Positions 1 to 20,254 are shown, counted from the stretch's first letter. The stretch: DNA of 64,000 bases from Mytilus trossulus (GCF_036588685.1 NC_086381.1:62744001-62808000), one strand, 5' to 3'. The notes: generated by a model from the letters alone, not told the origin. Numbers and translations are program-made.

Positions 1-116
1 TTACCTTCAGCTCCGGGTAACTTCTTCGGATAACCAAGCAACCATTCGGTGTTTCATTGATTCGCCGTTGGCAAAACCATATATGCATGTGGAAATGAAA
101 CCAATAGACGTTACGT
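1..116 (+). CDS. Gene A (IgSF receptor, 5' part outside window): 3' end of Ig C2-domain exon
   Basis: Frame 2 reads YLQLRVTSSDNQATIRCFIDSPLAKPYMHVEMKPIDVT, followed by phase-1 donor GTAAGT at 117. Collinear with the end of gene B exon 3 (TLKIHVTDEDNQAIIRCSLNSTLAQPSVYTDTKPLEVQ|gtaagt). Confidence 0.85.
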
Positions 117-1078
117 GTAAGTATATATGATTTGAAATTAAAAGTAATAGAATGTATAAGAAAACGTTATAAAAAGGCATTTACTTGTCGGTTGAAGGCA
201 ATCAGATGTACACTATCATCACTTTTGACAAGGTTAGTTTTGAAACTGTTTTTTAAACCAAATTTAATCTTAACAGATGATAGATACATTTGCATTAGTA
301 ACCCCAAAAGTTACCTACGACTATATACACCCATGTATTAAATGAGTAACGGAAAGGACCGTTTAAACTTAATTTAAAGCCAGAACAGAAACACGGACCT
401 ATTTAGGGTAGTATTTTTTTGGGCGAATCATTATCTAAGTGTGGCATCGACCCAGTGGTTGTTTAATCTTACCAAAAACTATAGAATGTGTATAAAAAAA
501 GTAACTACAAATCTTGCTTCAATTTGATCACTTAAAACTAAAGCCAGTTGCAACAAAAAAATTATCCGACCTTCTTTATAGATAGTGAACTTCCAAATAT
601 TATGTAGTCATAGTTTAGCCTGTGTTAAGAGTATATACCTCCCATCATAAATCATGTAATAAGGTGTTGATGCGAACATAGAAACAAGTTAGTTAAATTT
701 TCAAGTGGTATAGGTGAACTAATACCTTCGGATAGTTTACGAGGCAATCACGAGAATCATAAGTTAATTAACTTTTAAAGAATATCTGTTAAACAGATGA
801 CGACATATGGCGTTGTCAGTTTGTTTAAGTTTCATAAGTTTGATTACATCTTTTATATCTTCTAACTTATTATAAAATATTAAGTTTGCCATGGCGTTTT
901 TAGTTTTCTGCCACTTACAGACTTATCAGATTGAATATCGTCTTAGTATTTCCCACCTCTCATTTAAAAATCTGTCTTAATATATATTAAATTAAATGAT
1001 TTGAATATACTGCTTAATGTCTTGTATATGAGTAATGATAATATTTACCAATCAATCTATCTCAATTTTATTTGACAG

Positions 1079-1168
1079 CTTTTAGTAAAGATATGACCAC
1101 GTATCCTACCACAAGCAGTTATTTTACGGGTTCCGAGGGAGCAACAGAATCACACAGTGGATACATTT
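1079..1168 (+). CDS. Gene A Ser/Thr-rich stalk exon
   Basis: Acceptor tttgacAG, 90 nt, phase 1-1: SFSKDMTTYPTTSSYFTGSEGATESHSGYI; donor GTAATG. Ends SGYI versus SGNI in gene B exon 4. Confidence 0.75.
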
Positions 1169-1380
1169 GTAATGTTTTACTATGTTTTGTTGCCAGTTTC
1201 TTCTGAGAATTTCAATTAAAAGAGTTGAGAAAGTAGAAACTACTACTACTAAATGTGTAATAAAATTAGAACACATTTTAATATGCATTTTTCTGCGTTT
1301 GGCTTAATCATGTAATCAATATTGTTATAGAATATCGACAGTTTGATTCAAATTTAAATCTTATATAAACTGATGTTTTA

Positions 1381-1987
1381 GGGCATACGATACAGTTTTG
1401 ATCCTGTATATACAAGTTCATGAAAATTTGCATGTAGGATATTTTTTACCTGATTAAATCAAATATGTAATAAAAAATATACCTTCATGTGCTACTTGAG
1501 GTCGAAATTTTGTATATTTGCTCGAAATTCAGATTTGTGGCCGTAATTTCTTTTTCGAAAGAAAGACATAACTTTTTTGTTATAAAAGATAAACACAAAT
1601 TGTTTTTTGTTAAATAATCGGTAATTTCTGTATTTTATAAATATCTCATAAACAAAATAATTTTTTATTCAGAAATAACTCATATTTATCAAATATTCAT
1701 GAATTGAGGAAAAAACGTCATTTTTTACTGCATGTTTATCAAATTTAAAAAAAATCCTCTATTTACAGTTTTATAAAATTTGGGTCACATAATCTCCCGG
1801 CAAAATGAAACAAAATGCCGTTTTGAAAAATAGCGGTCCATGAACTCGTTTTCAAATTAAATCAGTTTGAATGATAAAAATCAGTCGAAAAATGCATCTT
1901 TTCCCGATATGTCACCGTTTGACGTCGCGAAAATAACAAATTACGTTAGCAACGTCATTACCTTCCCTGTAACTGTATCGTATGCCC
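1381..1987. mobile_element. PIF/Harbinger-type MITE (607 bp)
   Basis: Perfect 17-bp TIRs GGGCATACGATACAGTT / AACTGTATCGTATGCCC with TTA on both flanks (3-bp TSD); no ORF. Confidence 0.8.
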
Positions 1988-2770
1988 TTAAACACTTAAA
2001 ATCTATTAATCTTGACAAAATAAATTTCTTACACATGATTCTAAATAAAACATAACAAGTGTTGCATATTTGTAACTTCTTTGCATATATTGCATTTGCC
2101 TAAAAAAGTACATAATTAGTTTCAAATTGCCGACAGTGAAAATATGGTGTCGTCAAAATCATTTAATCCCCCTCCTCCCAAAAAATCAATAACATAAAAT
2201 TGAAATGATGCTATGAAAATGGTTCCTTTCTGTTCTTTGTTCAAATATTTACAATTAGAAAAAGCTTTAGCATGTATAGAAAAACTTCAAATTTTATAGA
2301 TTGTATTTACATGTCCTTTCGATGCATTGCTTAATCAATCAACTTTTTAAAATAATTTCTTAACTAATAAATGGAAATTTTAGTAAGATTTGCTATAAAT
2401 CATGCCAGATCCGAGGTTCTGAATACTGAGATGATGATACACACGTGGACCGATAGTACACAGCAGCGGTATCAACCCAATGTGTTTTATTTATTCATGA
2501 TGAATTAATCATGCAGATGTCCTTATAGTATGCACACGTTAGTTCTACTAGTTTTGAATTTTCAAATATATTTTTAATTCAAGCATCATTAAACAGACGT
2601 TGGTTATCGAAATAATCATCTGCTGCACTTAAAGTGTTACCGTTGATGAGAATACACATTTGTTCACACACTATCTACTACAATTAGTGGTATGATGACT
2701 TTTTTGTATCTTTATCATAACAATATATCTTGTTTTGTTAATTCATACTTGTTATCTTATCTTTTTGCAG

Positions 2771-2852
2771 ATTTTGGTATTGTTATTGGTTTGTTGGCTT
2801 TGGTTTTATTGGTTGCATACGGAATTTATCTGTTTAAAAGAAAGCATAACGA
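2771..2852 (+). CDS. Gene A transmembrane exon
   Basis: Acceptor ctttttgcAG; YFGIVIGLLALVLLVAYGIYLFKRKHN (hydrophobic run plus basic stop-transfer); phase 1 to 2; donor GTTAGT. Same phases as the gene B TM exon. Confidence 0.8.
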
Positions 2853-4486
2853 GTTAGTACATTTAATTATATGTAGATACATGTATAAGCGACCTTAAGT
2901 TGAAGACAATCTAATTAAGCTTTGCTTATAAGTATTCGCCAAATCCTTTTTACTTTCTGTTCTGAAAACTATTACTTCAGCCTATGAAATTTCATTTTTC
3001 AATTGTTAAAGGTTTCAATTAAACCGTGACAAAACAAGATAAACTAAATAAATCTTAAGAACAGAAAGTAGAAGGAGTGTTTTCATGCAGATCCCTGCAG
3101 ACAAAGGTTTGAATCACAGGATTTGCATTTTTAATCAGATCGAGTGGACGAATACCTGAGTGAAGCCCAATAAATTGTAGAAAATAACCATATTTTCAGG
3201 TCTTACATTACTGTTAGTTTTCTTGAAGCTGTAATCTTTTCAGGAAATATTTTTTGGAAAACAAATAATACGATTCACTTTGTATTGTTTGATTTGCAAC
3301 ATATTTCTCTTCTTGAAATCAAACAATAAATAGAAATTAATTATAACTAATATCGAAAATAAAACCCAACAACAATTGTATTAACATTTAAATTCACTAA
3401 TTTGGTTTAAAGATATTGTCATATATAGTGACAAAATATGAAATGATGTTAAACAACTATTTTAATCTATTTTAAATGAATATATAATTCAATTTTGAAC
3501 TGTCCCTCAGAGAGAAATATAGTCATACAAGATGACACCAATCACCGTCATATTTTGCAAATGTAACTTTCAATTAGTACCTTGAATCACATGGTAATTT
3601 TAAATACTTAATTACATGTTGTTAAAAAATATATACAAAACCTCTCGCAGACAGTCTCTTCATCAGGAATCATTCATTCCATCTAGTATCAAACTATGTA
3701 ATTCGCTCGATTTAAGTATTAGAAATGAACTTTCTTTAAATATGTTTGAATTAAAAACAGAACATAAACCTAACGCAATGTGTTAATGTGGTTATTTATA
3801 CGAAAATGCTCAACATTATTTCCTCTCGTTTAAAAATTATACAGTTCAAAGGAATAACTTAATTATTGATTTTAGAAAAGAAAATATACTTATCGACTTT
3901 GAAAATTTAATGTTCGGCAATGTTATGTTTAATATGAACATAAACACGCTAATTTTTACCAAAGTGCAGAATTATATTAAACAGACCAATCGCTTTTGAT
4001 AGTTTATAAACATTATGATTAAATATTTATCAGTAATAATGTAAATACTTTTTGTAGACTTCGAATGAAATTTTTCATTTTTTCCAAAGAAATGGATCAT
4101 CAATTTGGTTTTATTATAAATTCCTACCATTTGACAACAACAATTTAATTTAATTGTTTAAACAAACAATTATAACTTTCCTTTTGAGTGAATATTTATT
4201 CCAAGATTAAAACAACCTATAAGTTGGTCTATCATAAATAATTTACGGTCAACTCGACTTTAAGGAATCGATGAACCATGTCGTTTGAATTCTTGTTAAT
4301 TTCATGTCTTCATAATAATATTGTTTATGATGTTATTATTATGTATTTTATTTTTTTCGGTTATTTATCATTTGTATTTTGAATGTAATGGAGAATACTT
4401 TTTTAGTTGCAAAACTTGTGTCTCATCCTAATGTCAATGTTTTTGGACAATAAAATATGTTTACGCTAAATGCTTTTTATTTTCAG

Positions 4487-4678
4487 AGAACCAACGAACA
4501 ACAATTTGTGCATCGTAGGCCCACCCACACAACAGACAGGTCACTGTGAAATCATTGCGATGACTAATGATATTGACAAAGAGACATCAAAAGGTGCTGC
4601 CGTAACTATTGACGACCCAAGATTGCCTACCAGTGAAAATCTGGCAAGATAAGAACATAAAGACAATCAAACTCCGAC
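4487..4678 (+). CDS. Gene A first cytoplasmic exon, in-frame TAA at 4650-4652
   Basis: Acceptor tttattttcAG; phase-2 join is in frame (EEPTNNNLCIVG...ENLAR*EHKDNQTPT). Ends at AC|GTATGTATT, the same donor context as gene B exon 6. Confidence 0.7.
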
Positions 4679-5214
4679 GTATGTATTTGAACTTGATGTT
4701 GTACTATGTATTACCCACTGTGCAAGGGCTGTTTAGCCAGTGAAGGTCGTTAAAAACTTCCATATATATATATATACTATGTGTTTTTGTTCAATGACAT
4801 ATTACAATAACAATGTGTTGTGCTCCTGGAAAAGTACAATAGTCAAAACAGTTTATTTGTAACGTACTTGTGACCTAATCTATTTGTAGATCAATCGAAA
4901 TTAAGTGGGACAAGGATTTTTTTTTAATTTAAGGTTGAGTCAAAATAGATGTCGGACGGATTGTTATTTGCCAGCTTACCATCGGCAATAATTATTTCAA
5001 TAATCAATCTACCAACCATATTTATATACAAAAGATTTTTACCTGATGATTTAAATCTGTGAATTATCCGTTGTTTTGAAATTTTATTTAAATAGATATT
5101 TGATATACCGACTACGTTAAGAATTCTTGAAATGTTAAATAGAGCACAACCAAGACAACGTTGAATACATTGTTCCATTTGGTAAATAGATCTTTAGAAA
5201 TTTGATCAACACTA

Positions 5215-5475
5215 TGGGTGCCACATGTGGAACAGGATCTGCTTTTTCTTCCGAAGCATCGTAGACCACCCAAGGTTTTAAGTGGTGTTCATGATGCTCA
5301 GTATTTAGTTTGCAATGTTGTGTTTTGTGTACCATTGTTTGTATGTTTGTATGTTTGTATGTCTGTATGTCTGTTTGTCTCTGTCTCTTTTAGCTATGGT
5401 GTTGTCACTTTATTCTAGACTCGATGTTTGAGTATGAATGTTCCACTAGCACTGGTATCTTTTTTCTCTTTTTTA
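5215..5475 (-). repeat. Dispersed short repeat family (related copies ~17710-17950, ~26920-27145, ~42940-43150)
   Basis: Shared motifs GAGGGACxAAAGATACC...AAACTGACAACGxCATGGCTAAA...GATCTCAGGTGCTCC.GAAGGGTAAGCAG across copies. Confidence 0.7.
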
Positions 5476-6055
5476 CCCCTGATCTTTACAATTTCGACAT
5501 TCCCATTCAACACAGAACCATTTCTGCCAAAAAATGTTTTCTGTCGAAATATTGAAATCAAACTGACTTAATTCATGAAGATGACTATGATGTTATAAAA
5601 TATTTAACCAAGCAGAATAGCAATTACAGCATAGCATACTGCATGTACTGACACAAGGGTAATTTGGAAAAAAAAACATAGATTTTATTGATTTTATGCC
5701 ACGATGCTACTATGTACGCTTCTGCTTGCGTTGATAATTTCCATGGGTTGAGGATAACCGTGATAATCGATTTCTTGGTTTTGTAAAGTATGCATACTGC
5801 AAATTTCTGTGTCATTTGATCTTTTGTGGGGAGTTGTCTCTTTGGCAATCATACTACAGCTTCTATTTTATATTTTCAATAGAAAAGCTGTAATTCGTTG
5901 ATAATAATTTTCCGGTATTAAACGTCCGTGCTTTTAAAACGTTGTTTAGTATCAGCATCCCTGAAAAAAAAATTAAATTGCATCAATATAAAATCTGAAA
6001 ACGTACTTTCCTGTCATGCATTTAAGTCTAATTATTAACATATTATACTAAATAG

Positions 6056-6420
6056 ATATAGGAAGATGTGGTGGGAGTGCCAATGAGACAACTCTCCATC
6101 AAAAGGTTAAAGTACGGCCTTCAACACGGAGCCTTGGCTCACACCGAACAACAAGCTATAAAGAGCCCCAAAATTACTAGTGTAAAACCATTCAAACGGG
6201 AAAACCAACGGTCTAATCTATATAAACAAAACGAGAAACGAGAAACACGTATATATTACATAAACAAACAACAACTACTGTACATCAGATTCTTGACTTA
6301 GGACAGGTGCATACATTTGCAGCGGGATTAAACGTTTTAATGGATCCAAACCTTCTCCCTTATTCTGAAACAATAGCATAATATCACAACATAGAAAAAC
6401 ACACGATAAAACATTTCTGA
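6056..6420 (+). repeat. Dispersed repeat (long copy; homolog at ~43620-44075 and many short copies)
   Basis: GGAAGATGTG..GCCAATGAGACAACTCTCCATC head, also seen at ~5790, 9130, 20310, 24203, 37270, 42065, 45570 and 58320. Confidence 0.8.
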
Positions 6421-6454
6421 ATAAATCGACGTTTTCATTGATTACATTTGGCAG

Positions 6455-6620
6455 CAATACATCTCCTGTAACTACCGTAAGTGTAAATGCCCAGTTGAAA
6501 AAAGGTAGAAAAACTCAGATTCCAAACGAAGACAACAAAGACCAGAGCGGAGAAATAACAAACACGAAAAATCACAGTATAGAACAGAACATGATGGCAG
6601 AGAAAGAATCTAGCTTGTAA
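6455..6620 (+). pseudogene. Gene A vestigial last cytoplasmic exon (downstream of the premature stop)
   Basis: Acceptor ggcAG, phase 2. NTSPVTTVSVNAQLKKGRKTQI... aligns with gene B last exon NSPFQH*EYAQVNETDKTQH. Confidence 0.6.
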
Positions 6621-6898
6621 GTCTGATTTAATTTTCGGGAAAATTGATTTTATAACACAGATATACATTGTACCAATGCAAAAATCCAAATATATTCTTC
6701 AATCAGCATTTTCTTTAGGCTTTTGTGACAAAAAAAACCCATAAACGTTACAGAAAAATGATGAAATAATAATTCGAATAGTCTAAACCGTCAAAAAGAA
6801 CATTAGACATAACTATTTATAAAACAATTTTCCTGCAACGGTCTGAGGGAAATTTACAACTGGTATAAGCTTTAAGTAGAATAACTTTTATAACGATA

Positions 6899-7090
6899 TA
6901 CTGTACATTCAGAAATTATTGCTGGCATTTATTTTTGTGATTTTGTCATTTTAGACTTTAATGCGATTTTAATTTTTACGATATATATATATTTAGAAAA
7001 AAATCCTGTTTAATTCATATAAAATATATCAATTTGTGCATTTTTTCAAAATAATAAAAAAAAACTCGCAATAATTTCTTAATTTCCATT
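6899..7090. mobile_element. Small TACTGT...ACAGTA-type MITE (degenerate right end; related copy ~30870-31075)
   Basis: TACTGTACATTCAGAAATTATTGC versus GCAATAATTTCTTAATTTCCA form imperfect TIRs. Confidence 0.5.
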
Positions 7091-10000
7091 ATTTATGCTA
7101 ATTTTAATCCTACTGTTTGTACTAGAGTAAACAAAAAATCGAGGTGAAGAACAAAAAACTACATACGGTATATAATGAAGAGTAAGCGACAAAGGGTTAT
7201 GTAATAAAGAAAGGCAACAGTAGTATACCGCTGTTCGAAATTCATAAATTAACTGAGAAAAAAACCAAATCCGTGTTACAAGCTAAAACTGAGGGAAACA
7301 CATCAGATATAAGAGAAGAACTACGACACAACAGAAACACAACATTAAATAGTTACACACATAGACTCGAACGAACTATAACATGTATAATAATAACAGT
7401 TGAAGGAAATCAAGTTAAATATTTAAATTTCTGTTTTAATGAAGAGATACTCGTGCAATTGAATGCAATAGGAATAATTCAAGTGCAACAATTCTTAAAA
7501 CATTCCAAGATTTTCTCATCAAATCAAAACTACTGGAATTTTAACCTTTACCGTTTTTCAATGTCTGAGTGTGAGTTTTCTTATTTATCTGACTTGAAAT
7601 AAAACAAATTGACTTTAATGATGACGTCACAATGTACAATTCAAAGTATGGCCAAACTCACATCAGAGCAAAATTAACTGAAACTGCATCAACTGTGAAA
7701 GAAGTGAGAACAAGATTTCCTTTTTACATGGAAAGTTTTAGAGCAAGGTGTTTAAGTGAACGTATCACCATTCTTTTGATGTTTGTCTTTTTGATTGGTG
7801 CCGAGCGTATTTGCTTAATTTTCGCAAAACAACTATCTATCGCGTTAAAATCCACAGAAATACATAATGGAAATTGGGAAAACATAATTTTATTTACTCT
7901 GAAAAGTCTATTAATTTTGTAGGTAACAGGAAAGTGAAGATATGCAGAACAATATTAAAAACCAAAGATTCATAAACAGGGCTTTTGAAGATTGAATGTG
8001 CTCATCCACAAAAAAGAATACTTGATGTCGCGTTTTGCATTTTAAAGCCCTTTTCAACTTCGCAATTTTTAAATTAAATGTGTGTAATTAAATTGGTAAA
8101 AATTAAGTGTTACTTTTTGAAATCGGAAAAGCCGCGAAAATAAATCGTCCGCAAAAATAGGGAGGTGTACAGTATTCAGTTCTCTGCTGGCTTCCAAATG
8201 ATGGTAAATGAACTAACATAGCTCAAATATTAGTTTTGATGCTTATTCCAAAACATTATTCTTAAGGGATCGAGTTAAACTTTTTATTTACCCCCGTCCC
8301 CCATATACTGTATTGGATCAAAGGTAAATATTTATACAAATGATTTTTTCATTATCAGAAGATTTGCCAGACATAGAGAATTATGATTTTAATAAGTGAT
8401 TTCAGTACTTTTTTTATTAAATATTTAAATTTGGTTAAACGTTGAGTAAAAAAATAGTCACGACCTTATTCAAATAAACATGTTATAGTATGTCTGCTTT
8501 TTAGTTCAACATGCGTTGCTATGAAGTCAATTTGAATTTGACGAGAAAACGAGATGACACACATCGGGAAATAAAAATGAATTGATTTATTTTAAAGTAA
8601 AATAACAATACGGGATTTATCAGTTTTCCCTTTTTTATCCTTCTTAACCCTTTATCATTTCAAAAATTCGATTGATGTTTATTTATATTTATATTTTTTA
8701 TTATTTAAATGTATTTGATTTGAAAAGTTGGTTTGTGAACATGTACATTTTTGAAAAGTGATGTTGTATATGCTTCGATGCACATTTTTATAACTTTGTA
8801 TAGTCTTATTTGATTTCTTTCTTTGTCAAGTTATCTAATTATTCAACATGCTATTATTATGTTTTAATTTTATTAATAATTTTCATGTTTATATGATTTG
8901 TTTTTACTATAAGTAAAATTGTCACAATTTACATTTTGTTTTTTCATTCCTTATACGTTGCACCTGACAATGCCAAAAAGGATTCTTGGTGCATTTAGAC
9001 AAATACATGTTGAGCCTCCGGTTGTTGTTTTGTAACATAAAATCATGCAAATCAAGAGTCTCGTGTCTAAAAAAGAAATATGTGTTTGATTCGATGAATA
9101 TAGATTGCTTTATGTCCAATTAAAATTAAAGGTTAATGTCGTCAAGTGGTCTTTTGTGGAAAGTTACCTTATTGGCAATCATACCACATCTTCTTTTTTT
9201 ATATAAAAAGAGAGACCATACATAATTTGGGTAACTGAAAAAAACTATAAGTCGAAGACAAACTCATGACCTCCCCCTCTCTTCCCCCTAAACAATACCC
9301 CAAAAGTAGATCAGCCACTATATCAAAATGTTAGAAGTGTGCAACCCATTAACCTTAAAACCCATGCTGAACCAAGGTCATCATACAGAGACAATAGGTC
9401 CATTCTACTAATATTTAGATAATTGGTACATTGACCCATTTCCCAATAGTTGAACTTTTGTATGCAAAACTTTTAAATATTTGTGTTATTAAAAATCAAC
9501 ATAATTGAAGAAAAAAAAAAAAAAAAATGTGATACGATCTAACAATATTGACATATAATAACTATTTACAATTCAGGATGTAAATATGTAAGTGTTTTCC
9601 GGGTTTAACACATAGCTAAAATTATTATATCATTTGACAGTATGGGTCGTCTAATTGCAACATCACTAAGGATGAAGGTTTTTATTCGATTAGCGCTCTG
9701 TACGACACATCTTAAATGAAGTTATGAAAAGCAGACAAATTCTATTTTAACCATCACGTTTCATTTGTTTTCTTATTAATCTATACATACATTAATCTAT
9801 ACATTCCCCATTTCCATTCTCAATTTTATTATAGATAGTTACAACGAAAATAAAACTTGAAATACTTATTATTGTATTTTGCTAATATTACGTGACTAAA
9901 TGGCATTCAACATGTACTTTCGTAAACGATTATCTCATTTGGCAATACATACATGTACCCTGAGCTCATTCAACATGAAATGTATTCAGTGAAATCTAAT

Positions 10001-11364: not shown

Positions 11365-11540
11365 CAACCACTGGGTCGATACCACTACTGGTGGATGCTT
11401 CGTCCCGAGGGTACCATCAACCCAGTTTTCAGCACTTCGGAGTTGGCATAACTATCAAGTATATGGTAATTTTTATTAATTAACTGTTTACCAAAGTATG
11501 AATTATTCAAAATACTAAGTATTTTCGTATTCTGGGCATC
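11365..11540 (+). repeat. Retrozyme-family body fragment without ribozyme
   Basis: CACTGGGTCGATACCACTACTGGTGGATGCTTCGTCCCGAGGGTACCATCAACCCAG matches the 5' part of the 40356-40708 monomer. Confidence 0.6.
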
Positions 11541-12169
11541 TATTCGCTTATGGACAGGCAGCATGTTGGGTTTCTGTCTAATAAACTGTTATCAAATATC
11601 TTGTTTTGTTCTGAAGGATTACAAAACATTTTTCAAGGTTTGATAGACAATAACATTTTCCCCATAGAAGTTTTGTTATGTCGAATTAACCATACATATA
11701 GACCATGTAGTGGCGTTATGACTCTTCATTTGATAACAGTTTCAAGTGACACAAATAAAAATAAAATCACTTATATTTTGCTTGAATCTTTAGGAATACA
11801 AAACTATGGTAACAAAAAAAATCCATTTTTACAGATATCACACAGATATATATACAAACTAATCCAAATATTAGTATAATGTATAAAGTACCCCAGTTAA
11901 CGACAATGAACAGTTAAGATATCATATCATTGATGAAATCAGATTCTGATTTTTTAAAAATTGTTTGTTCTTTTGAAAAAACATTTTAAGAAAAAACATA
12001 TACGCAGTAATCTAAAAATTAACTCGCCATGTTAAAATTAAAATACACGGAAAACCCAAATACATAAGAATACATCTTCAAAGCTATTTATAACGAGTGG
12101 TAAGTTACATGAGTAGTGGAAATCCGTACATATGATAAATTATGTTATCTATTTTTAATTGAAAAGATG

Positions 12170-12177
12170 TATAAATA
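12170..12177 (+). promoter_or_regulatory. Candidate TATA box of gene B
   Basis: TATAAATA about 60 nt upstream of the signal-peptide ATG. The AT-rich background makes this weak. Confidence 0.3.
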
Positions 12178-12228
12178 AAACGTAACATTCATATTTCACT
12201 ATAGTGTTACTTATCAAACCAAGGCAAC

Positions 12229-12292
12229 ATGACCATGCATCTGATCAATTGTTTTGCAACTGTGTGTCTTTTAATAATAAGCGAGATCCATG
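12229..12292 (+). CDS. Gene B (V-C2 IgSF type I receptor) exon 1, signal peptide
   Basis: MTMHLINCFATVCLLIISEIH plus phase-1 donor GTAAGA; joins in frame to DVYSITVR. Confidence 0.75.
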
Positions 12293-13066
12293 GTAAGAGT
12301 TCATTGTTTTTACTTTCTTTCTTATGTATAAGTTTCCTATCTTAGGAACACCCTTAATTGGCATGGGCAATGGAGAATATGTAATGATAAAGATATATAT
12401 AAATTACATTTTTTATTTTCATAGGATCAGTTTATTATGCGGAAAGGTGTTTTCTATTATGCATCTCAAACTTCTAAAGTCGGCACGTATTTTATCACCT
12501 TTTATATTGAAATGTATTGTTCAACCAAACTTTTTAAATATAACATATTCAATTAAGACTCTTCTTTAACACAACAGCATAGAATATTAACTGGTAACAT
12601 ACCGGGCTCAATCAACGGGTACTTCTGGTTGATATATCTACTTGGTTATCTGAAATATGTCTTGTCCTTTGTTTGTTTTTTTTGTGTGCTGTTTTTGGAA
12701 AAAGTGGTATTAACGGGGATTTCTGTCATTGCTTGCTTTACATGTATCTCCAAATTTAGTATCAGTGTGTAATTACAAGAATAGATCCAAGTGAAATTTT
12801 AACAAAGCTAGATTTAAATCCTATTGTTTGAAAGAAAATATATTTTGCTTGATTAAATATGATATGATTTTAAAACTTCTTTTTGAAAGTTCAATATAAC
12901 TGTAATGAACAGCAGTGACGAATCTTGCTTAAAAATTGATTTTTTTTTATCAGATTTGGTTATTTTCAAATTTTTATAACAAAATAAAAATATATACTAT
13001 AGCTTTTCAAAAATTTGATAATTTTTTTGTCAAAATTATTACATGATAAAAAATAAAAAAAGGACA

Positions 13067-14850
13067 TAAAATTGAGAATGGAATTAAGTAATACAAGACT
13101 AACAAAGACCAGAAACTCCTGACTTGGGACAGGCGCAAAAGTGCGGCAGGGTTAAACATGTTTATGAGATCTCAACCCTCCCCCTATACCTCTAGCCAAT
13201 GTAAAAAAGTAAACGCATAACAACACGTACATTTAAAATTCAATTCAAGAGAAGTCCGAGTCTGATGTCAGAAGATGTAATTACAGAAAATAAACAAAAT
13301 GATAATTATACATAAATAACAACAGACTACTAGCAGTTAACTGACTGCCAGCTCCAGACTTCAATTAAACTGATTGAAATATTAAGATTTCATCATATGA
13401 ATATCAGGCACAATCCTTCCCGTTAGGGGTTTAGTATCATACCATCATAACATATATGAGAAGAACATAACCCGTGTCATGCCAACAACTGGTTTTTGAA
13501 TAAATGTGTTTAGTTCCGATGCAGAGACCCTATAAGTGAATCAATATTAACGCAAAAATAGGCAATCTTTAATGACCTGAAAACATTATTTCAACTATAT
13601 CCCTTCTTAATAAGTCTATTTAAAGGTTTTGTTAGTTTCTGCGGTGAATACTGACATTTTTGTGCTTGATAAAGAATATTTCCACAAAAAAACTTGATGT
13701 GAAATACCTAAACGTATAAGAAGTCTGCATGTTGAGCTATATTTACGAATGATGTCCTTAAACCGATGATAAAATTTAGTAAATGTTTTGACTAGTTTGT
13801 GATATCGAAAACCCTGGTGTAATAATTTTTACAATAGGAAATGAAAAATCATCTCTTTTATCATAAAGTTTAGTATTAAGCTTTCCGTTAGTGATATAGA
13901 AATCAAGATCGAGGACAAGCCAGTGGTCATTGTAGTATTAGCTTTTAATTTTATTTAATGTAAGTTCAACAGGATAAATTTCTTCAGTATACATACTGAA
14001 GTCGTCATTATTGAGAGCCAAAATGTCATTCAAATATCTAAAAGTATTATTAAATTTGTTTATCAGATGTTGTTTCGATGGGTCTTTGCTGTTTTTTGTC
14101 ATAAATTATAACTCATAGCAATACAAAAACAGGTCCGCTATACGTGGTGCACAGTAAGTCTCCATTGGAATTCCGATAACCTAACGATATACGGAATCTC
14201 CAAAGAGAACAAAAATGTTATTTAGTAAATATTCAAGGGCATACATAGTATCAAAGCATGTCCAATTGACACAGTTTTTGTGTTTGTTGCTACTAAAAAT
14301 TACATAAAAGAGTTAGAACATATATATTAACATTCTGACTTTTTAAATGCCCATTTAATTAGGTGGGTGATTTTTTTTAATGAGAATGTGAGGCAATGTG
14401 GTATACAGGGTAGAACAATCAAAACTTTGAACAGATTCAAAATCACAAATATAAGCATTCAATTTATCAAGTTCTTCCAACGAGTTCTTGACACTCCAAA
14501 AGTAATTAATTCCACTATTCTCAAAAGCCTTATTTGAACAATTTATTATCAGGTTTTATATTGTACCAAATGTACTGGTAAGAAGAAAAGACAATTTAGT
14601 TGTGGAACAATGGCTTGAAGAAGTAATAAATCTATATTTGTAAGGTGTTTTGTGGAGCTTCGGAAGCCAATACATAGTAGGGACTTTCATTGTATTTGGT
14701 TCTGCTTGTAAAGAGGAAGCTAAAAGTTTATGTTTGCTACATATGTTGTTTTATGAAAATGGAGTCAGTTGGAATGTTGGTGAATTGGTAATTTCTTTTT
14801 TCAGAACCTCAATGTAAAGTTTACGCCAAACAATAATAATATTATATTAT
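13067..14850 (-). mobile_element. Penelope-like retroelement (probably Naiad-type), 5'-truncated and decayed, in gene B intron 1
   Basis: Minus-strand RT remnants ALEYLLNNIFVLFGDSVYR*VIGIPME..CAPRIADLFLYCYE and FRYLNDILALNN, with stops and frameshifts, followed by a long 3' tail. Confidence 0.8.
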
Positions 14851-15060
14851 ACATACCAGAACTGAATATATTTACCCCTAAAATGTAGTCTAACAGAACA
14901 GGTACTGCAATTTGATAAAACACAAAAGTATTTTATCTTCATTTTATTTTCAATTGAATTTTACAATGAAACAAATGCAACTAAAATAAAAACTGCATAT
15001 AATAATAACAATGTAATGGAGTATCTAAATTACAACACTTATTTATGTTTTATTTTTCAG

Positions 15061-15429
15061 ATGTTTATTCTATTACTGTGAGAATAAATCAAAACATATC
15101 TGGAGTAATAGATGAAAGTGGTACACAAATAAAATGCTCATTCACAAGGCATAATGTTATTAAAATATTTGCCATCGAATTTAAAGCTGAAAATGAAACA
15201 GTTGTAACCATTTTACCAGACGATAAACCAAGATTTACAACAAAAGGACAGTATCTGGAAGACAGAGTGACAGTGATGAATATAAGTAAAGATTCTACGG
15301 AGGCTATTTTGACATTTATTTACCTTACCTGCACGGATCAAACTAATTATAGTTGTTCAGTTCTTTATCTTGACCAGAACAGTAAAACAGAAAGAAGAAA
15401 CTCAGGAATGTCAACTCTTTTCGTTAAAG
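15061..15429 (+). CDS. Gene B exon 2, Ig V-set domain
   Basis: Phase 1-1, 369 nt. B-strand Cys (QIKCSF), YLEDRVTV, DQTNYSC (DxxxYxC), STLFVK; acceptor tttttcAG, donor GTAAT. Confidence 0.9.
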
Positions 15430-16167
15430 GTAATAATAATGTAGGCGAATATTAGAAAGCTGACCATTAATATACAAACAATTTGTTTATAGAAAAAGAA
15501 ATTAAAATAAATATTGATCACATCTTGAAAATATCAAATTATAATATTCATATAACCCAAAAATTAGACTACCAGGATATGCTTTCATAATGCTTGTACT
15601 GATTAATTGTCTACGATATACAACATTTATCATAATGATAAGCAAACATAAATCATAGTTGATTAAACTTTAAGATTATCTATGGTAATTTTACATAACT
15701 TACGATTAAGTTGTATTCCTTTTTAAAGATGAAAAAAAATACCAAAAATACGATTTTCTTATCTTTTCATGTTGTGTTTGTTGAACTTGTTTCTTAAAAG
15801 AGTGATAAATTAATGGCAAATGAATTTACAGTTGAATAAACAGAGTAGAGCCATACAAGGGAAAGCCCTACTTAATTTGAAACAATCATTTACGGTACAC
15901 CGTTTTCGGAATTTATGTCATATTGCCTTAAACAGTATATATTTGTTTAGGAGCCAGCTGAAGGACGCCTCCGAGTGCGAGAATTTCTCGCTACATTGCA
16001 GACCTATTGGTATCCTTTTGCTGTTGTTTTTTCTATGGTCGGGTTGTTGTCTCTTTGACACATCCCCATTTCCATTCTCAATTTTGTGCATGTCAGTTAA
16101 CAAATGTATGGTTTATATCGTCTGCCGAGAAAACCAAGCTGACTAATTATAATTATTTATTTTGCAG

Positions 16168-16656
16168 TTCCACCTTCCAAACCTTATGTTATAACTATAG
16201 TTAGTTCACCAAAAGATGTCACAACTACCCCAACAACGTTAGAAAATGCGACTAATCCTCACGTTACTGCTCCACAAAATAGATTTAAAACGACTAATAG
16301 CCAGATCAATTCGAACCAGCACACAACAAATGACGAGCAGTTTAAACATGAACCGTCATTTAACTCCACCATCTTACAGATAGGAGATGAAATAACATTT
16401 ATTTGTAGTGGAAATGTTGGAAATCCACCAGGTGTATTCATCTGGCAAAAATATAGGCATGGCGAAAATCCAACAAATTATACAAATATAACTACAACTA
16501 TCCAGGAGTTATCTGATATTTGCTCCTACAATGGTACAAGTACCTTGAAAATCCATGTAACTGATGAGGACAACCAGGCCATCATTCGATGTAGTTTAAA
16601 TTCAACATTAGCGCAACCAAGTGTGTATACAGATACAAAACCACTGGAGGTTCAGT
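16168..16656 (+). CDS. Gene B exon 3, Ig C2 (CD80/nectin-like) domain with Thr/Asn-rich insert
   Basis: Phase 1-1, 489 nt open: VPPSKP...GDEITFICSGNVGNPPGVFIWQKY...STLKIHVTDEDNQAIIRC...LEVQ; donor GTAAGT. Confidence 0.9.
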
Positions 16657-17221
16657 GTAAGTAGTTGTTCATTTTCTTTTTAATTATAACATTCTGTTTT
16701 TTTAATAAATTGAAATTACAAAAGTGAAACAAAATTGTGAACACTAACTTAGTGTTGTCTAGAAATGTATGATCAGCTGGTATTGTACAGGCGTTCAAAT
16801 AGCATTACTTATTTTATACTTTGACGTTTATATAAGTCATAAAATATATAATTCTTGATTGCAATCCTGTTTCTACTGAACCATATACTACTACTGTAGT
16901 AAATGAATATGTTCACAATGCTCCTTTAAAAAACCCATCCACATGATCAAGATACCTGACATTAATATAAGTTGTCAGCTTTTCCATGTCAAGAGTAGTA
17001 TTCATAAATAAGACCAAAAAATATTCAGCTTGGATAATGTATGTATGTATACTATATGGTCTCCTCTACTGACTGCATAATAGCACTTTTATGATAAGAT
17101 TCAGTTTGTAGGTATAGTACAAGTTGAATTAAACGCATGTTACAGTTCATGCATGATGTATGTTAAGCATTATGTTCTGGTGTTAATCAATGATCGAATA
17201 AAATTTTTCTAATCTTAACAG

Positions 17222-17338
17222 CTCCTGATTATGATACTACAATAGAATTTATACGAACAACGTTAGTTACTACGAGAGACAATACTGTTTCAGATTCAAC
17301 CAATCAACCAGAAGTGGACAGTGCCAGTGGAAACATAG
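17222..17338 (+). CDS. Gene B exon 4, stalk
   Basis: Phase 1-1, 117 nt: SPDYDTTIEFIRTTLVTTRDNTVSDSTNQPEVDSASGNI. Confidence 0.75.
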
Positions 17339-17997
17339 GTAATACCTAGTTCATAATGTCTGTGGTTTAACACTTTTACATTAACATAAAAAAAAATGAT
17401 AAAACTGTAAAAGATGATGGATTTAAAATTCAAAATATTTTTTTTTCTATAATGTCCTGTACCAAGTCATGAAAATGGCTATTTTTATATTATAGTTCGT
17501 TTCTGTGTGTATTACATTTAAAGGTTGTGTTTCTGTTGTGTTGCAGGTTTCCTTTTCTATAAGTTGTGTTTCCCTCAGTTAAAGTTTGTAACCCGGATTT
17601 GTGTTTATCTCTCAATCGATTTATGAGTTTCGAACAGTGGTATACTACTGTTGCTTTTATAATACGTTGAAACCTGTTTAAACGGCCTTTCTCTAGATTT
17701 CAGGAGTACAGAAGGGACAAAAGATACCAGAGGCACATTCAAACTCAGATAGAAAATAAACTGACAACGTCATGGCTAAAAAAGAAAAAGAGAAGAGAAC
17801 TAATACACAAAAAAAACCATAGAAAACTAAAATGAAGAAACACGATTACCTACAATAACTGGGATTGATCTCAGGTTCTGCGGATGGATAACAGATCTTG
17901 CTCCACATGCAACACCGGTCGCGTCTTGCTCATGTTATTTTGAACCCAGTAAATAATCTAATTATAAATATATACTTTTGTTTGTCTCTTTTCGCAG

Positions 17998-18082
17998 TTG
18001 TTCTTAGTGTATGTATTGGTATAGCAGTCTTGCTTTTAGTGATAATTGGAATTTGGTGTTTTTACAAACCAAAGGGAGAAAA
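17998..18082 (+). CDS. Gene B exon 5, transmembrane
   Basis: VVLSVCIGIAVLLLVIIGIWCFYKPKGEK; acceptor ttcgcAG, donor GTAAGT, phase 1 to 2. Confidence 0.85.
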
Positions 18083-19142
18083 GTAAGTTATTTGAAGTTA
18101 TTTTACTAAATTTTCTATATTACGGATTATATTTGAAACTGTTACTGGTTAAGAATAAATCATTTACAGCTGTGCATCTTCGACGAGCATAATTTAACAA
18201 TCTATTTAACAAGTATAAATAGTTTGGTTTGTCGAATACATCACACATTGAATGATTCTAAACAATAAAGATAGAAATGGAAGATGCCATGCTTATTTGC
18301 TTCTGCAACTTTTCATTTTTCGACAACAAGTTTTAAAATGTTGTAGATTGATATTTCCATCAGACTATTGGTACCTCAAAAAGTATTGCTGTGAACCCTA
18401 CTGACCGTTTTGTTTACATTTTCATATTAGGCAGACAAAAACTTTTCAAAGACAAAAAAAGATAAATCACTTGTAAAGTTATTTAAATGTTTGCTTTTCA
18501 AATATCCCTCAAATAAGAATTTTTGATAAATTTGAGGAATTTAACGTTCAAAATGCCATTATCACTGTCAGTAAATTTCCCTATGCCCCATTGTATTGCG
18601 TTTGAATATCCCAATCAAAACGCCAAGCTCATACATGTCAAGCATGTTCTCACAATACGTGCTTGAGCTTTTGATTTCGCCATTTTATAAGGATTTAACT
18701 TCTTCACGGTACTTATATCCAGTCTTACAATCTGTTCCAATAGATTTAGCAGAAATCGGGTTGGTTATCGACTTAAAATATTATATATTTAGTTATCTGC
18801 ATGAATTGGCTGTCCTTTACGTTTGGTTTGTGTCTCCGGCGACGTGCCACACGTGTTTTCAGTCTGAGACCTTTTTATGTCATAACAGTTTTCCGAAGTG
18901 CTTTTTTATCGACTATGTCCTTTAAATGATTTTGACATTTTCACGGAATGTGCGTTCGCATAGTGCATGAATGAGACACTTATCTTCCAATCAGCCAATA
19001 ACCTTTGGGTGTTAATTCTATTCCATCAGTTAATGTGTATAACCTTTATATCCATTATCCTATATGGTTGGTGGGATTTGAAAATCAGAAAAGTACTTGT
19101 ACTTAAAGTAAGTAAATGATCATGAGTTGAATTTTCTTTCAG

Positions 19143-19361
19143 GAAAGCAAGTCGATATCAGGTTACTGAAAAATCTAATATTAGCCAATCAAAACAAACG
19201 ATTTATTTTAAACAAGTTTCTCAGGCAGACAGTTATGAAAAAATCCCGTTGAAAATTGATACTGGAAAAGAGAAAACAACGGTTGACATTGATGACATTA
19301 AAAAGCAGAATATGGTATACATAGTAACACAGAAAAAAGATGATGAAAATAAATTTTCCAC
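19143..19361 (+). CDS. Gene B exon 6, cytoplasmic, Tyr-containing
   Basis: Acceptor tctttcAG; KASRYQV...TIYFKQVSQADSYEKIPL...DDENKFST; donor GTATGT; phase 2-2. Confidence 0.75.
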
Positions 19362-20091
19362 GTATGTATTAGAAACATATTTTATATAAACGAAGCAATT
19401 GATAAGGGCTTTTTTGTAGCTGAGTAATACAAAATGTGGGCATAGTTTCTTTGACTTAACGTTTATTGATATTGATTCAATGTTGAAGGTCTAATAATAA
19501 TTATCTTATTGTTACTGGCTTTTTTTAACATTATGTTTAACTACTTTTATGCAATGTGAGGATATTCTTTGTTTCTAGAACACATGTCCTTAGTGTTGAT
19601 GTGATTGTTGGTACTTACCGTAACGCTTTTAGAAATTATCAAACACTGTGTCAATATATGTATATGTACTACCATGTCCAGTATTTAACAACATAAATTG
19701 TCTATACCAGCTCTTAATCAAGTGTATCAATTTTTTCTAATTTCATCAAATTCTAAAAAAAAAAGCAGCATTGATATTTTAATAAAGACAGCTATAAACA
19801 CCGTTCCTTGCTTAGAACAGGCATACATTTGTTAGATTTTTAACAAGTGTGTACAAAAAACCGATATAAATGGTACAGTCAAGGCACGTCACACAAATAA
19901 CAAACATGTGTTAGCTTCGAACTAACTAGTGAACACGATGTTTCTGCTAAACAGCCTCGTCTTTATTTCCAAAACGCTATTAGTATTTAGAATTAGAATA
20001 ATAACAATCGTTATCGTTAGGAATGGAAAGTTTATGTTTCTGATTGTACCTGATAATATAATAACAATAAAAATATTTGACGTCTATTTAG

Positions 20092-20254
20092 GTTTCGCAG
20101 AAATTCTCCATTCCAACATTAAGAATATGCTCAAGTGAATGAAACAGATAAAACACAGCATATAAATAATACGCAGATCCAAAACAATTATACTCAAAGG
20201 GGAATGCAGTGTCAGGATTCACAAAAAAGGATTAACGACCATTCGGCAAAATAA
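20092..20254 (+). CDS. Gene B exon 7; TAA at 20120-20122 precedes an in-frame EYAQV tail ending at 20254
   Basis: FRRNSPFQH*EYAQVNETDKTQH...HSAK*. The product is 457 aa to the first stop and 501 codons to the second. Confidence 0.6.

What the first reader, a model, noticed from the sequence alone, without database searches (positions are those of the whole stretch)
1..20254. Tandem pair of V-C2 Ig receptors that have each lost their ITIM by a different route
Seen: genes A and B share exon phases (1,1,2,2), domain order (C2, stalk, TM, two cytoplasmic exons), the donor context AC|GTATGTATT, and an alignable last exon (xYAQV...KTQ versus xNAQL...KTQ). Neither can produce an intact distal ITIM-like motif. 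Established: vertebrate paired-receptor families (Siglec, CEACAM, LILR, SIRP) evolve by tandem duplication and ITIM loss, and colonial invertebrates use ITIM/ITAM IgSF arrays (Hydractinia Alr). Inference: this may be part of an undescribed bivalve paired or decoy IgSF receptor cluster.
Basis: partly seen in the sequence, partly recalled or inferred. Interest (0 to 1): 0.78.

Follow-up and report, generated by a model that had tools for sequence, protein, structure and literature searches.

The report
Mussel Ig receptor pair with truncated tails
Two neighbouring mussel genes for cell-surface immunoglobulin-type receptors each carry a stop codon that removes the tail segment where related genes have an inhibitory signalling motif, an ordinary kind of receptor-family evolution whose function here is untested.

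Summary
The window is Mytilus trossulus: its 82,295,107-base contig is the one on record for the matching RefSeq proteins.

- **Gene A:** its V exon lies just upstream of the window. Its protein is P0088.
- **Gene B:** LOC134683209.
- **Relationship:** the two are old tandem duplicates. V exons are 65% identical and dN/dS is about 0.2.
- **Expression:** spliced contigs support gene B.

Both genes carry a TAA that removes the distal tail.

- **Gene A:** TAA at 4650-4652, where M. galloprovincialis and M. edulis read Q and M. californianus reads H.
- **Gene B:** TAA at 20120-20122, where orthologues read T, K or A just before EYAQV or VYAQV.

Paralogues keep a canonical VEYAQV in the same exon context, so descent from an ITIM is plausible.

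- Gene A's Y-to-N change is shared by five species, so it is old.
- No gene B orthologue has a canonical -2 residue.
- Neither transmembrane segment has a charged residue, and the locus has no ITIM-bearing partner, so this is not a classical paired-receptor cluster.
- The four runs laid showed no joint into B's distal exon among those listed.

The scan already noted ITIM/ITSM Ig receptors elsewhere in this genome. Verdict: new member of a known kind. Function and fixation of the stops are untested.

The parts
1..116 (+). Gene A, 3' end of the C2-set Ig exon (the exon starts upstream of the window); ends in phase 1
   Evidence: sequence. 47% identical to B's C2 end (E 1e-8). 92% identical to M. 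californianus P0023.
1079..1168 (+). Gene A stalk exon, phase 1 in and out. The annotated protein P0088 skips it.
   Evidence: aligns to the stalk of M. edulis P0069. P0088 reads ..KPIDVTYFGIV...
2771..2852 (+). Gene A transmembrane exon, no charged residue, donor GA|GTTAGT, phase 2
4487..4678 (+). Gene A cytoplasmic exon 1, with an in-frame TAA at 4650-4652, 26 bases before the donor AC|GTATGTATT
   Evidence: Orthologues read Q (P0097, P0069) or H (P0023) at that codon. P0088 ends ..SENLAR.
6455..6620 (+). Gene A former last coding exon (..TTVSVNAQLKKGRKTQ..), with AAT (N) at 6486-6488 where B has Y. It cannot be reached in frame because of the upstream TAA.
   Evidence: 78% identical to the M. 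edulis A last exon, E 5e-20.
12229..12292 (+). Gene B signal-peptide exon (MTMHLINCFATVCLLIISEIH..)
   Evidence: The contig loose end in front of the V exon maps to 12271-12291.
15061..15429 (+). Gene B V-set Ig exon
   Evidence: Joint 15429>16168 in 4 of 4 runs. Model pLDDT 95, with best fold matches to VH/VHH domains and CRIg. The Pfam V-set match is weak (13.7 bits against a cut-off of 26).
16168..16656 (+). Gene B exon with a Thr/Pro/Asn-rich linker and a C2-set Ig domain
   Evidence: Pfam C2-set_2, 32.5 bits against a cut-off of 21. Joint 16656>17222 in 4 of 4 runs.
17222..17338 (+). Gene B stalk exon
17697..17753 (+). Alternative exon of RefSeq isoform X3 (..SASGNIDFRSTEGTKDTRGTFKLR, no transmembrane segment). 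It lies in a stretch where very many contigs pile up.
   Evidence: P0089 matched by eye to the sequence. Depth about 9000 in bin 17601-17800.
17998..18082 (+). Gene B transmembrane exon, no charged residue, phase 2 out. Contigs join the stalk to 18001, three bases further in.
   Evidence: joint 17337/8>18000/1 in 4 of 4 runs
19143..19361 (+). Gene B cytoplasmic exon 1, with a conserved YEKI, donor AC|GTATGTATT
   Evidence: Joint 18082>19143 in 3 of 4 runs. 85% identical to M. galloprovincialis.
20092..20254 (+). Gene B distal exon: T FRRNSPFQH, TAA (20120-20122), EYAQVNETDKTQ.. Y codon at 20126-20128. A second TAA at 20252-20254 falls where orthologues read on.
   Evidence: RefSeq X1 (P0090) ends ..KFSTFRRNSPFQH. 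67% identical to M. galloprovincialis X1, which reads ..FQNTEYAQV... No joint into this exon is among those listed for the 4 runs.
20553..20810 (+). Start of gene B's alternative terminal exon (3' end not determined). Joined to cyt1 it gives AC+A, TGA (..KFST stop). Joined to the transmembrane exon it gives AA+A, TGA (..KPKGEKK stop).
   Evidence: The loose end behind 18082 in run X4 equals 20553-20582. RefSeq X2 (P0084) ends KFST.

Best explanation
These are two real, neighbouring Mytilus trossulus genes. Gene A is the P0088 protein and gene B is LOC134683209.

**What they encode.** Each encodes a type I membrane protein: signal peptide, V-set Ig domain, mucin-like linker, CD80-like C2-set Ig domain, stalk, one transmembrane helix, and a tail built from two exons.

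**Family.** They are an old tandem duplication kept across the genus. They belong to a large mussel family (at least 42 C2 exons in this genome) whose ancestral last coding exon carried an ITIM of the VEYAQV type.

**How the motif decayed in this subfamily.**
- The A lineage replaced the tyrosine by asparagine before the five sampled species split.
- The B lineage kept the tyrosine but let the -2 residue drift to T, K or A.
- The B lineage also made the exon optional through alternative 3' exon choice.

**The reference M. trossulus genome.** Each gene additionally carries one TAA that cuts off the distal exon.
- Gene A: TAA at a Q/H codon in cytoplasmic exon 1.
- Gene B: TAA at the -2 codon of the motif.

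Both genes can therefore make only tail-shortened receptors.

**Function.** By inference, these bind whatever the ectodomain binds without recruiting SH2 phosphatases through the distal tyrosine. They would act as non-inhibitory or decoy forms, or signal only through what remains, such as B's conserved YEKI.

**Shown versus inferred.** Shown: gene structure, splicing of B, the stops, and the orthologue and paralogue states. Inferred: that the motif ever signalled, that its loss matters, and that the stops are fixed in the species.
For: **Species and identity.** The contig length 82,295,107 is that of G000:C9 and of the contig on record for XP_063398436-8 [Mytilus trossulus]. P0084 and P0090 reproduce the window's exons.

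**Duplicates.** V exons are 65% identical and C2 45-54%. dN/dS is 0.21 and 0.22, with dS 0.9-1.5.

**Domains.**

**Splicing.** GT..AG joints for V>C2 and C2>stalk appear in 4 of 4 runs and for TM>cyt1 in 3 of 4. The stalk>TM joint also appears in 4 of 4 runs, but its listed ends are GG..TT because of the 3-base offset. Contigs of three runs differ from the window at about 1 letter in 100.

**Gene B -2 codon.**

| Source | Reading |
|---|---|
| M. trossulus (window) | stop |
| M. galloprovincialis X1 | T |
| M. coruscus P0019 | T |
| M. edulis X1 | K |
| M. californianus, 2 genes | A |
| M. coruscus P0081, P0085 | A |

All seven orthologues listed keep Y..V.

**Decay of B's distal exon.** It is 67% identical to M. 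galloprovincialis, against 85-92% for the V, C2 and cyt1 exons. It also has a second early stop. Both fit relaxed constraint after the first stop.

**Gene A.** Q (M. galloprovincialis, M. edulis) or H (M. californianus) stands where M. trossulus has TAA. N occupies the tyrosine position in M. trossulus, M. galloprovincialis, M. edulis, M. californianus and M. coruscus P0100.

**ITIM ancestry.**
- P0034: ..NTSPISPQPVEYAQVNE.
- L041 in the C7 family cluster: ..ISTQPVEYAQVNE.
- L027 and L031: AVYAEV and AVYAQV.
- More distant relatives: IEYAEV, VIYSEV, SLYEGV.

**Tail-less isoforms elsewhere.** M. galloprovincialis X2 and M. edulis P0082 end KFST. M. edulis P0093 ends ..KRKGEK.
Against: - Nothing here shows phosphorylation or phosphatase binding.
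- No B orthologue has a canonical ITIM -2 residue. YAQV also fits a YxxØ sorting signal.
- The stops are seen in one assembly only. RefSeq models rest on that same assembly. The contigs that cross 20120 are low-depth and unspliced, and their letters at that place were not among the rows shown.
- The runs are RNA only by the tool's guess.
- Gene A's expression was not tested.
- Homology of the A and B distal exons is significant in only 1 species pair, plus 1 cross-species pair.
- Among 20 paralogue loci the loose motif search was not enriched (14 forward against 11 reverse). Only 2 clear distal exons were found.
- No orthologue DNA could be fetched, so the proposed single-base origins of the stops rest on amino acids alone.
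Confidence: 0.72

Rival explanations
1. The two TAA codons are alleles private to the sequenced individual or haplotype, or assembly errors. On this view M. trossulus as a species makes the same full-length tails as its sister species, and the double loss is an accident of one reference genome in a highly polymorphic genus.
For: Only one assembly was examined, and one search finds a single copy of the exon. Contigs from other individuals differ from the window at many intronic places (tables 3 and 4), which shows high polymorphism. RefSeq models derive from the same assembly and so are not independent.
Against: There are two separate stops in two genes. B's distal exon also shows extra decay: 67% identity and a second early stop. 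That fits a lesion older than a sequencing error or a very recent allele.
Confidence: 0.2
2. The distal Y-A-Q-V is not an inhibitory motif in this subfamily. It would instead be a YxxØ endocytic or sorting signal, or have no function. Its loss would then change trafficking or nothing, and the ITIM language is only a resemblance.
For: The -2 residue varies (T, K, A) among B orthologues. The A lineage has lived without the tyrosine in 5 species. Isoforms lacking the exon are annotated in 3 species.
Against: Paralogues have canonical VEYAQV, IEYAEV and VIYSEV. Papers report that oyster Ig receptors with ITIMs signal through SHP/SHIP (PMC11841013 and PMC11999971, passages read).
Confidence: 0.25
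3. Both genes are pseudogenes in the course of decay, and the stops are the first lesions.
For: Two premature stops relative to orthologues. A second stop in B's distal exon. The annotated A model skips the stalk exon.
Against: All ectodomain and transmembrane exons are open with intact splice sites. A-against-B dN/dS is about 0.2. Spliced B contigs were found in 4 of 4 runs. Both stops lie in or within 26 bases of the last exon junction, so by the usual 50-55 nucleotide rule (general knowledge) they should not trigger nonsense-mediated decay.
Confidence: 0.08

Closest known systems
Oyster ITIM-bearing Ig receptors (CgIgIT, CgIgIT2, CgNCAM1)
   Same: These are bivalve single-pass Ig-superfamily receptors with cytoplasmic ITIMs, reported to damp haemocyte responses through SHP/SHIP (PMC11999971 and PMC11841013, passages read). 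The wider mussel family here has canonical ITIMs in the equivalent tail position.
   Different: The ectodomains differ: five Ig domains, or three Ig plus FN3, against V + C2-set here. No sequence relationship was tested. The two genes in this window cannot encode the motif.
Vertebrate paired or decoy receptor families (SIRP, LILR/KIR, Siglec, CEACAM)
   Same: Tandem duplicates with related ectodomains whose inhibitory tails are lost by point mutation or truncation.
   Different: The tail-less members have no charged transmembrane residue and no ITAM. The locus has no ITIM-positive partner. The ectodomains are only 45-65% identical, and dS near 1 marks an old split.
ITSM receptors (PD-1, SLAM family): TxYxx(V/I)
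   Same: B orthologues of M. galloprovincialis and M. coruscus read TEYAQV.
   Different: It is a single motif without the ITIM+ITSM tandem. In this genome the T codon is a stop. M. edulis has K there and M. californianus has A.
V + CD80-like C2-set adhesion and co-signalling molecules (nectin/CADM, B7 type)
   Same: The domain order is V-set then C2-set_2. Automatic names of M. coruscus relatives are CADM3 and ALCAM.
   Different: PDB sequence matches are weak only: SYG-2 at E 9e-4 and CD276 at E 0.19. No orthology is shown.
Hydractinia Alr gene family
   Same: An invertebrate cluster of Ig-superfamily genes with ITIM/ITAM-type tails (10.1101/2022.03.04.482883; search listing and start of abstract only).
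   Different: A different phylum and domain type. No evidence here bears on allorecognition.

Membership tests
Ig-superfamily type I membrane receptor (V-set + C2-set) | N-terminal V-set Ig fold | tested here: met
   AlphaFold model of B's V exon: pLDDT 95, pTM 0.88. Foldseek top matches are VHH/VH domains and CRIg, TM 0.7-0.8, E about 1e-7. Pfam V-set alone is below its cut-off.
Ig-superfamily type I membrane receptor (V-set + C2-set) | Second Ig domain of the C2 type | tested here: met
   PF08205 C2-set_2, 32.5 bits against a cut-off of 21
Ig-superfamily type I membrane receptor (V-set + C2-set) | Signal peptide and a single transmembrane helix | tested here: met
   Signal exon 12229-12292. 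One hydrophobic segment per protein by a Kyte-Doolittle scan.
ITIM-bearing inhibitory receptor | Cytoplasmic (S/I/V/L)xYxx(I/V/L) | tested here: not met
   Gene A has N for Y plus an upstream TAA. Gene B has TAA at -2. P0084, P0088 and P0090 show no ITIM. The feature is met in paralogues L041 and P0034.
ITIM-bearing inhibitory receptor | Tyrosine phosphorylation and recruitment of SHP/SHIP | not testable with these tools
   Needs biochemistry
ITSM-bearing receptor | Cytoplasmic TxYxx(V/I) | tested here: not met
   The window has a stop at the T position. The feature is met in M. galloprovincialis X1 and M. coruscus P0019.
Paired activating/inhibitory receptor cluster | The tail-less member has a charged transmembrane residue or an ITAM, to couple to an adaptor | tested here: not met
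   Transmembrane segments read FGIVIGLLALVLLVAYGIYLF and VVLSVCIGIAVLLLVIIGIWCFY. No ITAM in P0084, P0088 or P0090.
Paired activating/inhibitory receptor cluster | An ITIM-positive partner with a near-identical ectodomain in the same cluster | tested here: not met
   Only 2 of the 42 C2-exon matches lie on this contig. A and B are 45-65% identical.
Pseudogene | Disabled reading frame in the body of the gene, or no transcripts | tested here: not met
   Ectodomain exons are open. Spliced B contigs in 4 of 4 runs. Gene A's transcripts were not tested.

The most novel reading that the evidence does not exclude
M. trossulus as a species may have silenced the distal tyrosine exon of both members of a genus-conserved receptor pair, through two independent nonsense mutations that were fixed by selection. 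That would turn the whole locus into signalling-dead decoys. Possible drivers are a pathogen, or a transmissible cancer lineage that exploits inhibitory self-recognition. Mussel transmissible neoplasia is said to have arisen in M. trossulus; this is recalled, not checked here.
Probability: 0.07. Interest if true: 0.7.

Novelty: new member of a known kind. Interest (0 to 1): 0.42.

Why it matters
If the stops are fixed, this is a clean invertebrate example of a familiar vertebrate pattern. An ITIM-type receptor lineage loses its inhibitory tail step by step: tyrosine loss, drift of the -2 residue, optional exon use, then nonsense codons. Sister species preserve each intermediate state.

It also gives a natural comparison for asking whether the VEYAQV-type motif signals in mussel haemocytes. 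M. galloprovincialis has the motif-plus and motif-minus isoforms of the same receptor, while M. trossulus has only the minus forms.

By itself it adds two uncharacterized genes to a large family. The scan has already met ITIM/ITSM Ig receptors elsewhere in this genome.

Tried and rejected
- **Copies within the window.** tblastn with A and B exon peptides found no further family member in 20-64 kb. It found no significant similarity between the A and B tails.
- **Paralogue tails.** Tails in 20 fetched 10-kb loci gave no hit at E<0.05 to either tail.
- **Copies of B's distal exon.** An own-genome search found only the exon itself.
- **Loose tail-motif search.** The search over the 20 loci was no better than the reverse-strand control: 14 against 11. 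No family-wide count of ITIM retention is claimed.
- **Degenerate DNA pattern.** It gave 2 hits against 1 for the reversed control. Its value lies in where the second hit falls and what it reads, not in the count.
- **Other searches of the region.** Rfam on 1-22000 found nothing. The repeat search found one 112-nt inverted pair, 7261-7372 and 17495-17606. Pfam on six other open frames found nothing above cut-off.
- **Positive selection.** Site-wise tests need orthologue DNA that I could not fetch.
- **Polymorphism at the stops.** Whether the TAA codons are polymorphic could not be read, because 165 rows of other letters were not shown.
- **Depth.** Contig depth suggests that most B transcripts in three runs skip cytoplasmic exon 1. 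The tool warns that depth cannot rank parts of a gene, so this stays a hint.
- **Sources not seen.** Supplementary files of papers were not opened. None of the papers read bears on these genes.

Full report
**What is there**

The window is G000:C9:62744001-62808000, in a 1.30-Gb genome of about 30% G+C. It comes from the Mytilus trossulus assembly. Proteins that reproduce the window's exons are on record from a contig of 82,295,107 bases, which is the length of C9. They are named 'uncharacterized protein LOC134683209 isoforms X1-X3 [Mytilus trossulus]'.

Gene B is that locus. Gene A's product is P0088 (367 aa), which the protein tools list as encoded by the window itself.

**Gene structure**

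Both genes run on the + strand. I read the exon borders from the sequence.

For gene B I checked them against contigs of four public runs laid on 14401-20400.
- V>C2 (15429>16168) and C2>stalk (16656>17222) are GT..AG joints in 4 of 4 runs.
- Stalk>TM appears in 4 of 4 runs, three bases inside the predicted acceptor. Its listed ends are GG..TT.
- TM>cyt1 (18082>19143) is a GT..AG joint in 3 of 4 runs.

The tool only guesses that these runs are RNA. The spliced joints themselves speak for RNA.

A loose end in front of the V exon maps to 12271-12291, the signal exon.

The donor AC|GTATGTATT closes cytoplasmic exon 1 in both genes.

Gene A's V exon lies about 1 kb upstream of the window, at L021:4674-5036. 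It is 65% identical to B's.

**Domains**

- B's first Ig exon folds as a V-set domain: pLDDT 95, with best matches to VH/VHH domains and CRIg. Pfam alone is weak for it.
- The second exon has a Thr/Pro/Asn-rich linker and a CD80-like C2-set domain above Pfam's cut-off.
- No solved structure is close in sequence. The best is SYG-2 at E 9e-4.

**The tails in this genome**

Gene A's cytoplasmic exon 1 has TAA at 4650-4652, 26 bases before its donor. The protein therefore ends ..SENLAR, and the last exon cannot be reached in frame. That last exon (6455-6620) reads ..TTVSVNAQLKKGRKTQ...

Gene B's distal exon (20092-20254) reads T-FRRNSPFQH, then TAA at 20120-20122, then EYAQVNETDKTQ... RefSeq X1 ends at that TAA (P0090).

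None of the joints listed for the four runs enters the distal exon. (13 further joints were not shown.)

A contig of run X4 continues from the transmembrane exon into letters identical to 20553-20582. This exon starts behind a good acceptor. It puts TGA right after the junction codon, whether joined to the transmembrane exon or to cyt1.

A 1631-letter contig holds cyt1 and then 1278 letters that lie outside 14401-20400. RefSeq X2 ends ..KFST (P0084), which fits cyt1>20553.

The same short forms are annotated elsewhere:
- M. galloprovincialis X2 ends KFST.
- M. edulis P0082 ends KFST.
- M. edulis P0093 ends right after the membrane.

The tyrosine-bearing exon is therefore optional across the species complex.

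**Orthologues**

An exhaustive HMMER search with B's V exon gave 66 hits at E up to 0.001. Two word-index searches with the tails of database proteins gave 8 and 5 hits. Together they recovered the A/B subfamily in five Mytilus species.

Residues around the B motif:

| Source | Reading |
|---|---|
| M. galloprovincialis X1 | ..SPFQN-T-EYAQV |
| M. coruscus P0019 | ..SSSQH-T-EYAQV |
| M. edulis X1 | ..SASQH-K-EYAQV |
| M. californianus, two genes | ..QH-A-VYAQV |
| M. coruscus P0081, P0085 | ..QH-A-VYAQV |

All seven keep Y..V. None has S, I, V or L at -2. T gives an ITSM-type motif. M. trossulus alone has a stop at that codon.

The window's distal exon is 67% identical to M. galloprovincialis, against 85-92% for the V, C2 and cyt1 exons. 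It also stops again at 20252-20254, where two orthologues read on. This looks like relaxed constraint behind the first stop, and it argues against a simple sequencing error.

A-type proteins compare as follows:
- M. galloprovincialis and M. edulis read Q where the window has TAA.
- M. californianus reads H there.
- All A-type proteins, in five species counting M. coruscus P0100, have N at the tyrosine position.

The Y-to-N change is therefore old, while the TAA is private to M. trossulus or to this individual.

A CAA>TAA step in gene A and an AAA>TAA step in gene B would each be a single change. That is inferred from amino acids only.

**Is the motif a former ITIM?**

Within the window the two last exons are not significantly alike. 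Most cross-species pairs are not either (z 0.4-1.3).

The M. californianus A and B tails do align end to end (z 6.4, 0 of 2000 shuffles), with RINAQV opposite AVYAQV.

Outside the subfamily:
- M. coruscus P0034 reads ..NTSPISPQPVEYAQVNE...
- A locus inside the big family cluster on contig C7 of this same genome reads ..ISTQPVEYAQVNE...
- Two further C7 paralogues read AVYAEVNE and AVYAQVNE.
- More distant relatives carry IEYAEV, VIYSEV and SLYEGV.

Tyrosine is therefore the likely ancestral state and the canonical ITIM the likely ancestral motif.

I could not count motif retention across the family. The loose motif scan was no better than its control (14 against 11).

**Family and age**

At least 42 C2 exons of this type are in the genome, clustered on C7, C8, C6 and C15. 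Only the two of this pair are on C9.

A against B gives dN/dS of 0.21 (V exon) and 0.22 (C2 exon), with dS of 0.9-1.5. That marks an old duplication under purifying selection, with no gross sign of diversifying selection.

In M. galloprovincialis and M. edulis the two genes have consecutive identifiers on one contig, so they are probably neighbours there too. I did not see coordinates.

**Mechanism**

The anatomy and the species comparison are shown. The function is inferred.

The ancestral receptor probably recruited SH2 phosphatases through the phosphorylated distal tyrosine. Oyster ITIM-bearing Ig receptors are reported to do this (passages of PMC11841013 and PMC11999971).

In this pair that link has been dismantled in stages. 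In the M. trossulus reference only short-tailed forms can be made. They would bind ligand without that inhibitory output.

B keeps a YEKI in cyt1 that is conserved in most B-type orthologues, so it may still signal or be sorted.

Neither transmembrane helix has a charged residue and no ITAM is present. The classical activating partner of a paired receptor is therefore not what these are.

**Rivals**

- The stops may be private alleles.
- The motif may be only a sorting signal.
- The genes may be dying.

The third is the weakest, given open ectodomain frames, spliced transcripts and stops placed where nonsense-mediated decay is not expected.

**Known or new**

Three searches returned 5, 5 and 6 papers holding all their terms, and none concerns this family by title or abstract: Mytilus + ITIM + immunoglobulin; ITIM + oyster + immunoglobulin superfamily; and Mytilus + immunoglobulin superfamily + inhibitory receptor. 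A looser search (at least 2 of bivalve/ITIM/ITSM) matched 969 papers, and none of the 12 listed concerns it either. No paper names these loci.

The scan itself has already noted ITIM/ITSM Ig receptors elsewhere in this genome. Note s1-823582 says at least 57 such genes; I did not check that figure. Two notes on this same window (s1-821038, s1-821147) state the two stops, and I confirm both.

**Verdict**

A well-observed, real feature. It is an uncharacterized member pair of a known kind of receptor family, with a neat comparative story of tail loss. Function and fixation of the stops are untested.

Noticed in passing
window 15801-16200, 17601-17800 and 20201-20400: Stretches inside gene B's introns and just after the distal exon collect contig depths of thousands to tens of thousands in all four runs. 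Many loose ends and joints link them (for example 16085>20317). They look like copies of abundant, transcribed interspersed repeats. They have no Rfam match.
   Followed up: partly
window 17697-17753: RefSeq isoform X3 of gene B (P0089) leaves the stalk exon for a short exon inside one of those repeat stretches and ends without a transmembrane segment. It may be a soluble form created by an exonised repeat, or an artefact of multi-mapping reads.
   Followed up: no
window 17998-18000: Contigs of all four runs join the stalk exon three bases inside the predicted acceptor of the transmembrane exon. This fits a one-codon (TTG/GTT) length difference between the reference and the sequenced animals.
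   Followed up: no
window 2853-4486 (gene A intron): A-type proteins of M. edulis and M. californianus carry an extra ..RSYAVQR.. between the transmembrane exon and cytoplasmic exon 1, probably from a 24-base micro-exon. M. trossulus and M. galloprovincialis models lack it. I did not look for it in the intron.
   Followed up: no
window 6520-6591: M. edulis isoform X3 of the A-type gene (P0002) ends in another frame of the last exon (FQTKTTKARAEKEQTQ..), through an internal acceptor. The same frame in the window has two stops.
   Followed up: partly
window 7261-7372 and 17495-17606: A 112-nt inverted pair, 78% complementary. One arm lies between the genes and the other in gene B's stalk-TM intron. 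Probably two copies of a dispersed repeat.
   Followed up: no
G000:C15:1360351-1360599 and G000:C6:14900431-14900679: Two C2-exon matches with identical score and span on different contigs. This could be a recent duplication or an uncollapsed haplotig.
   Followed up: no
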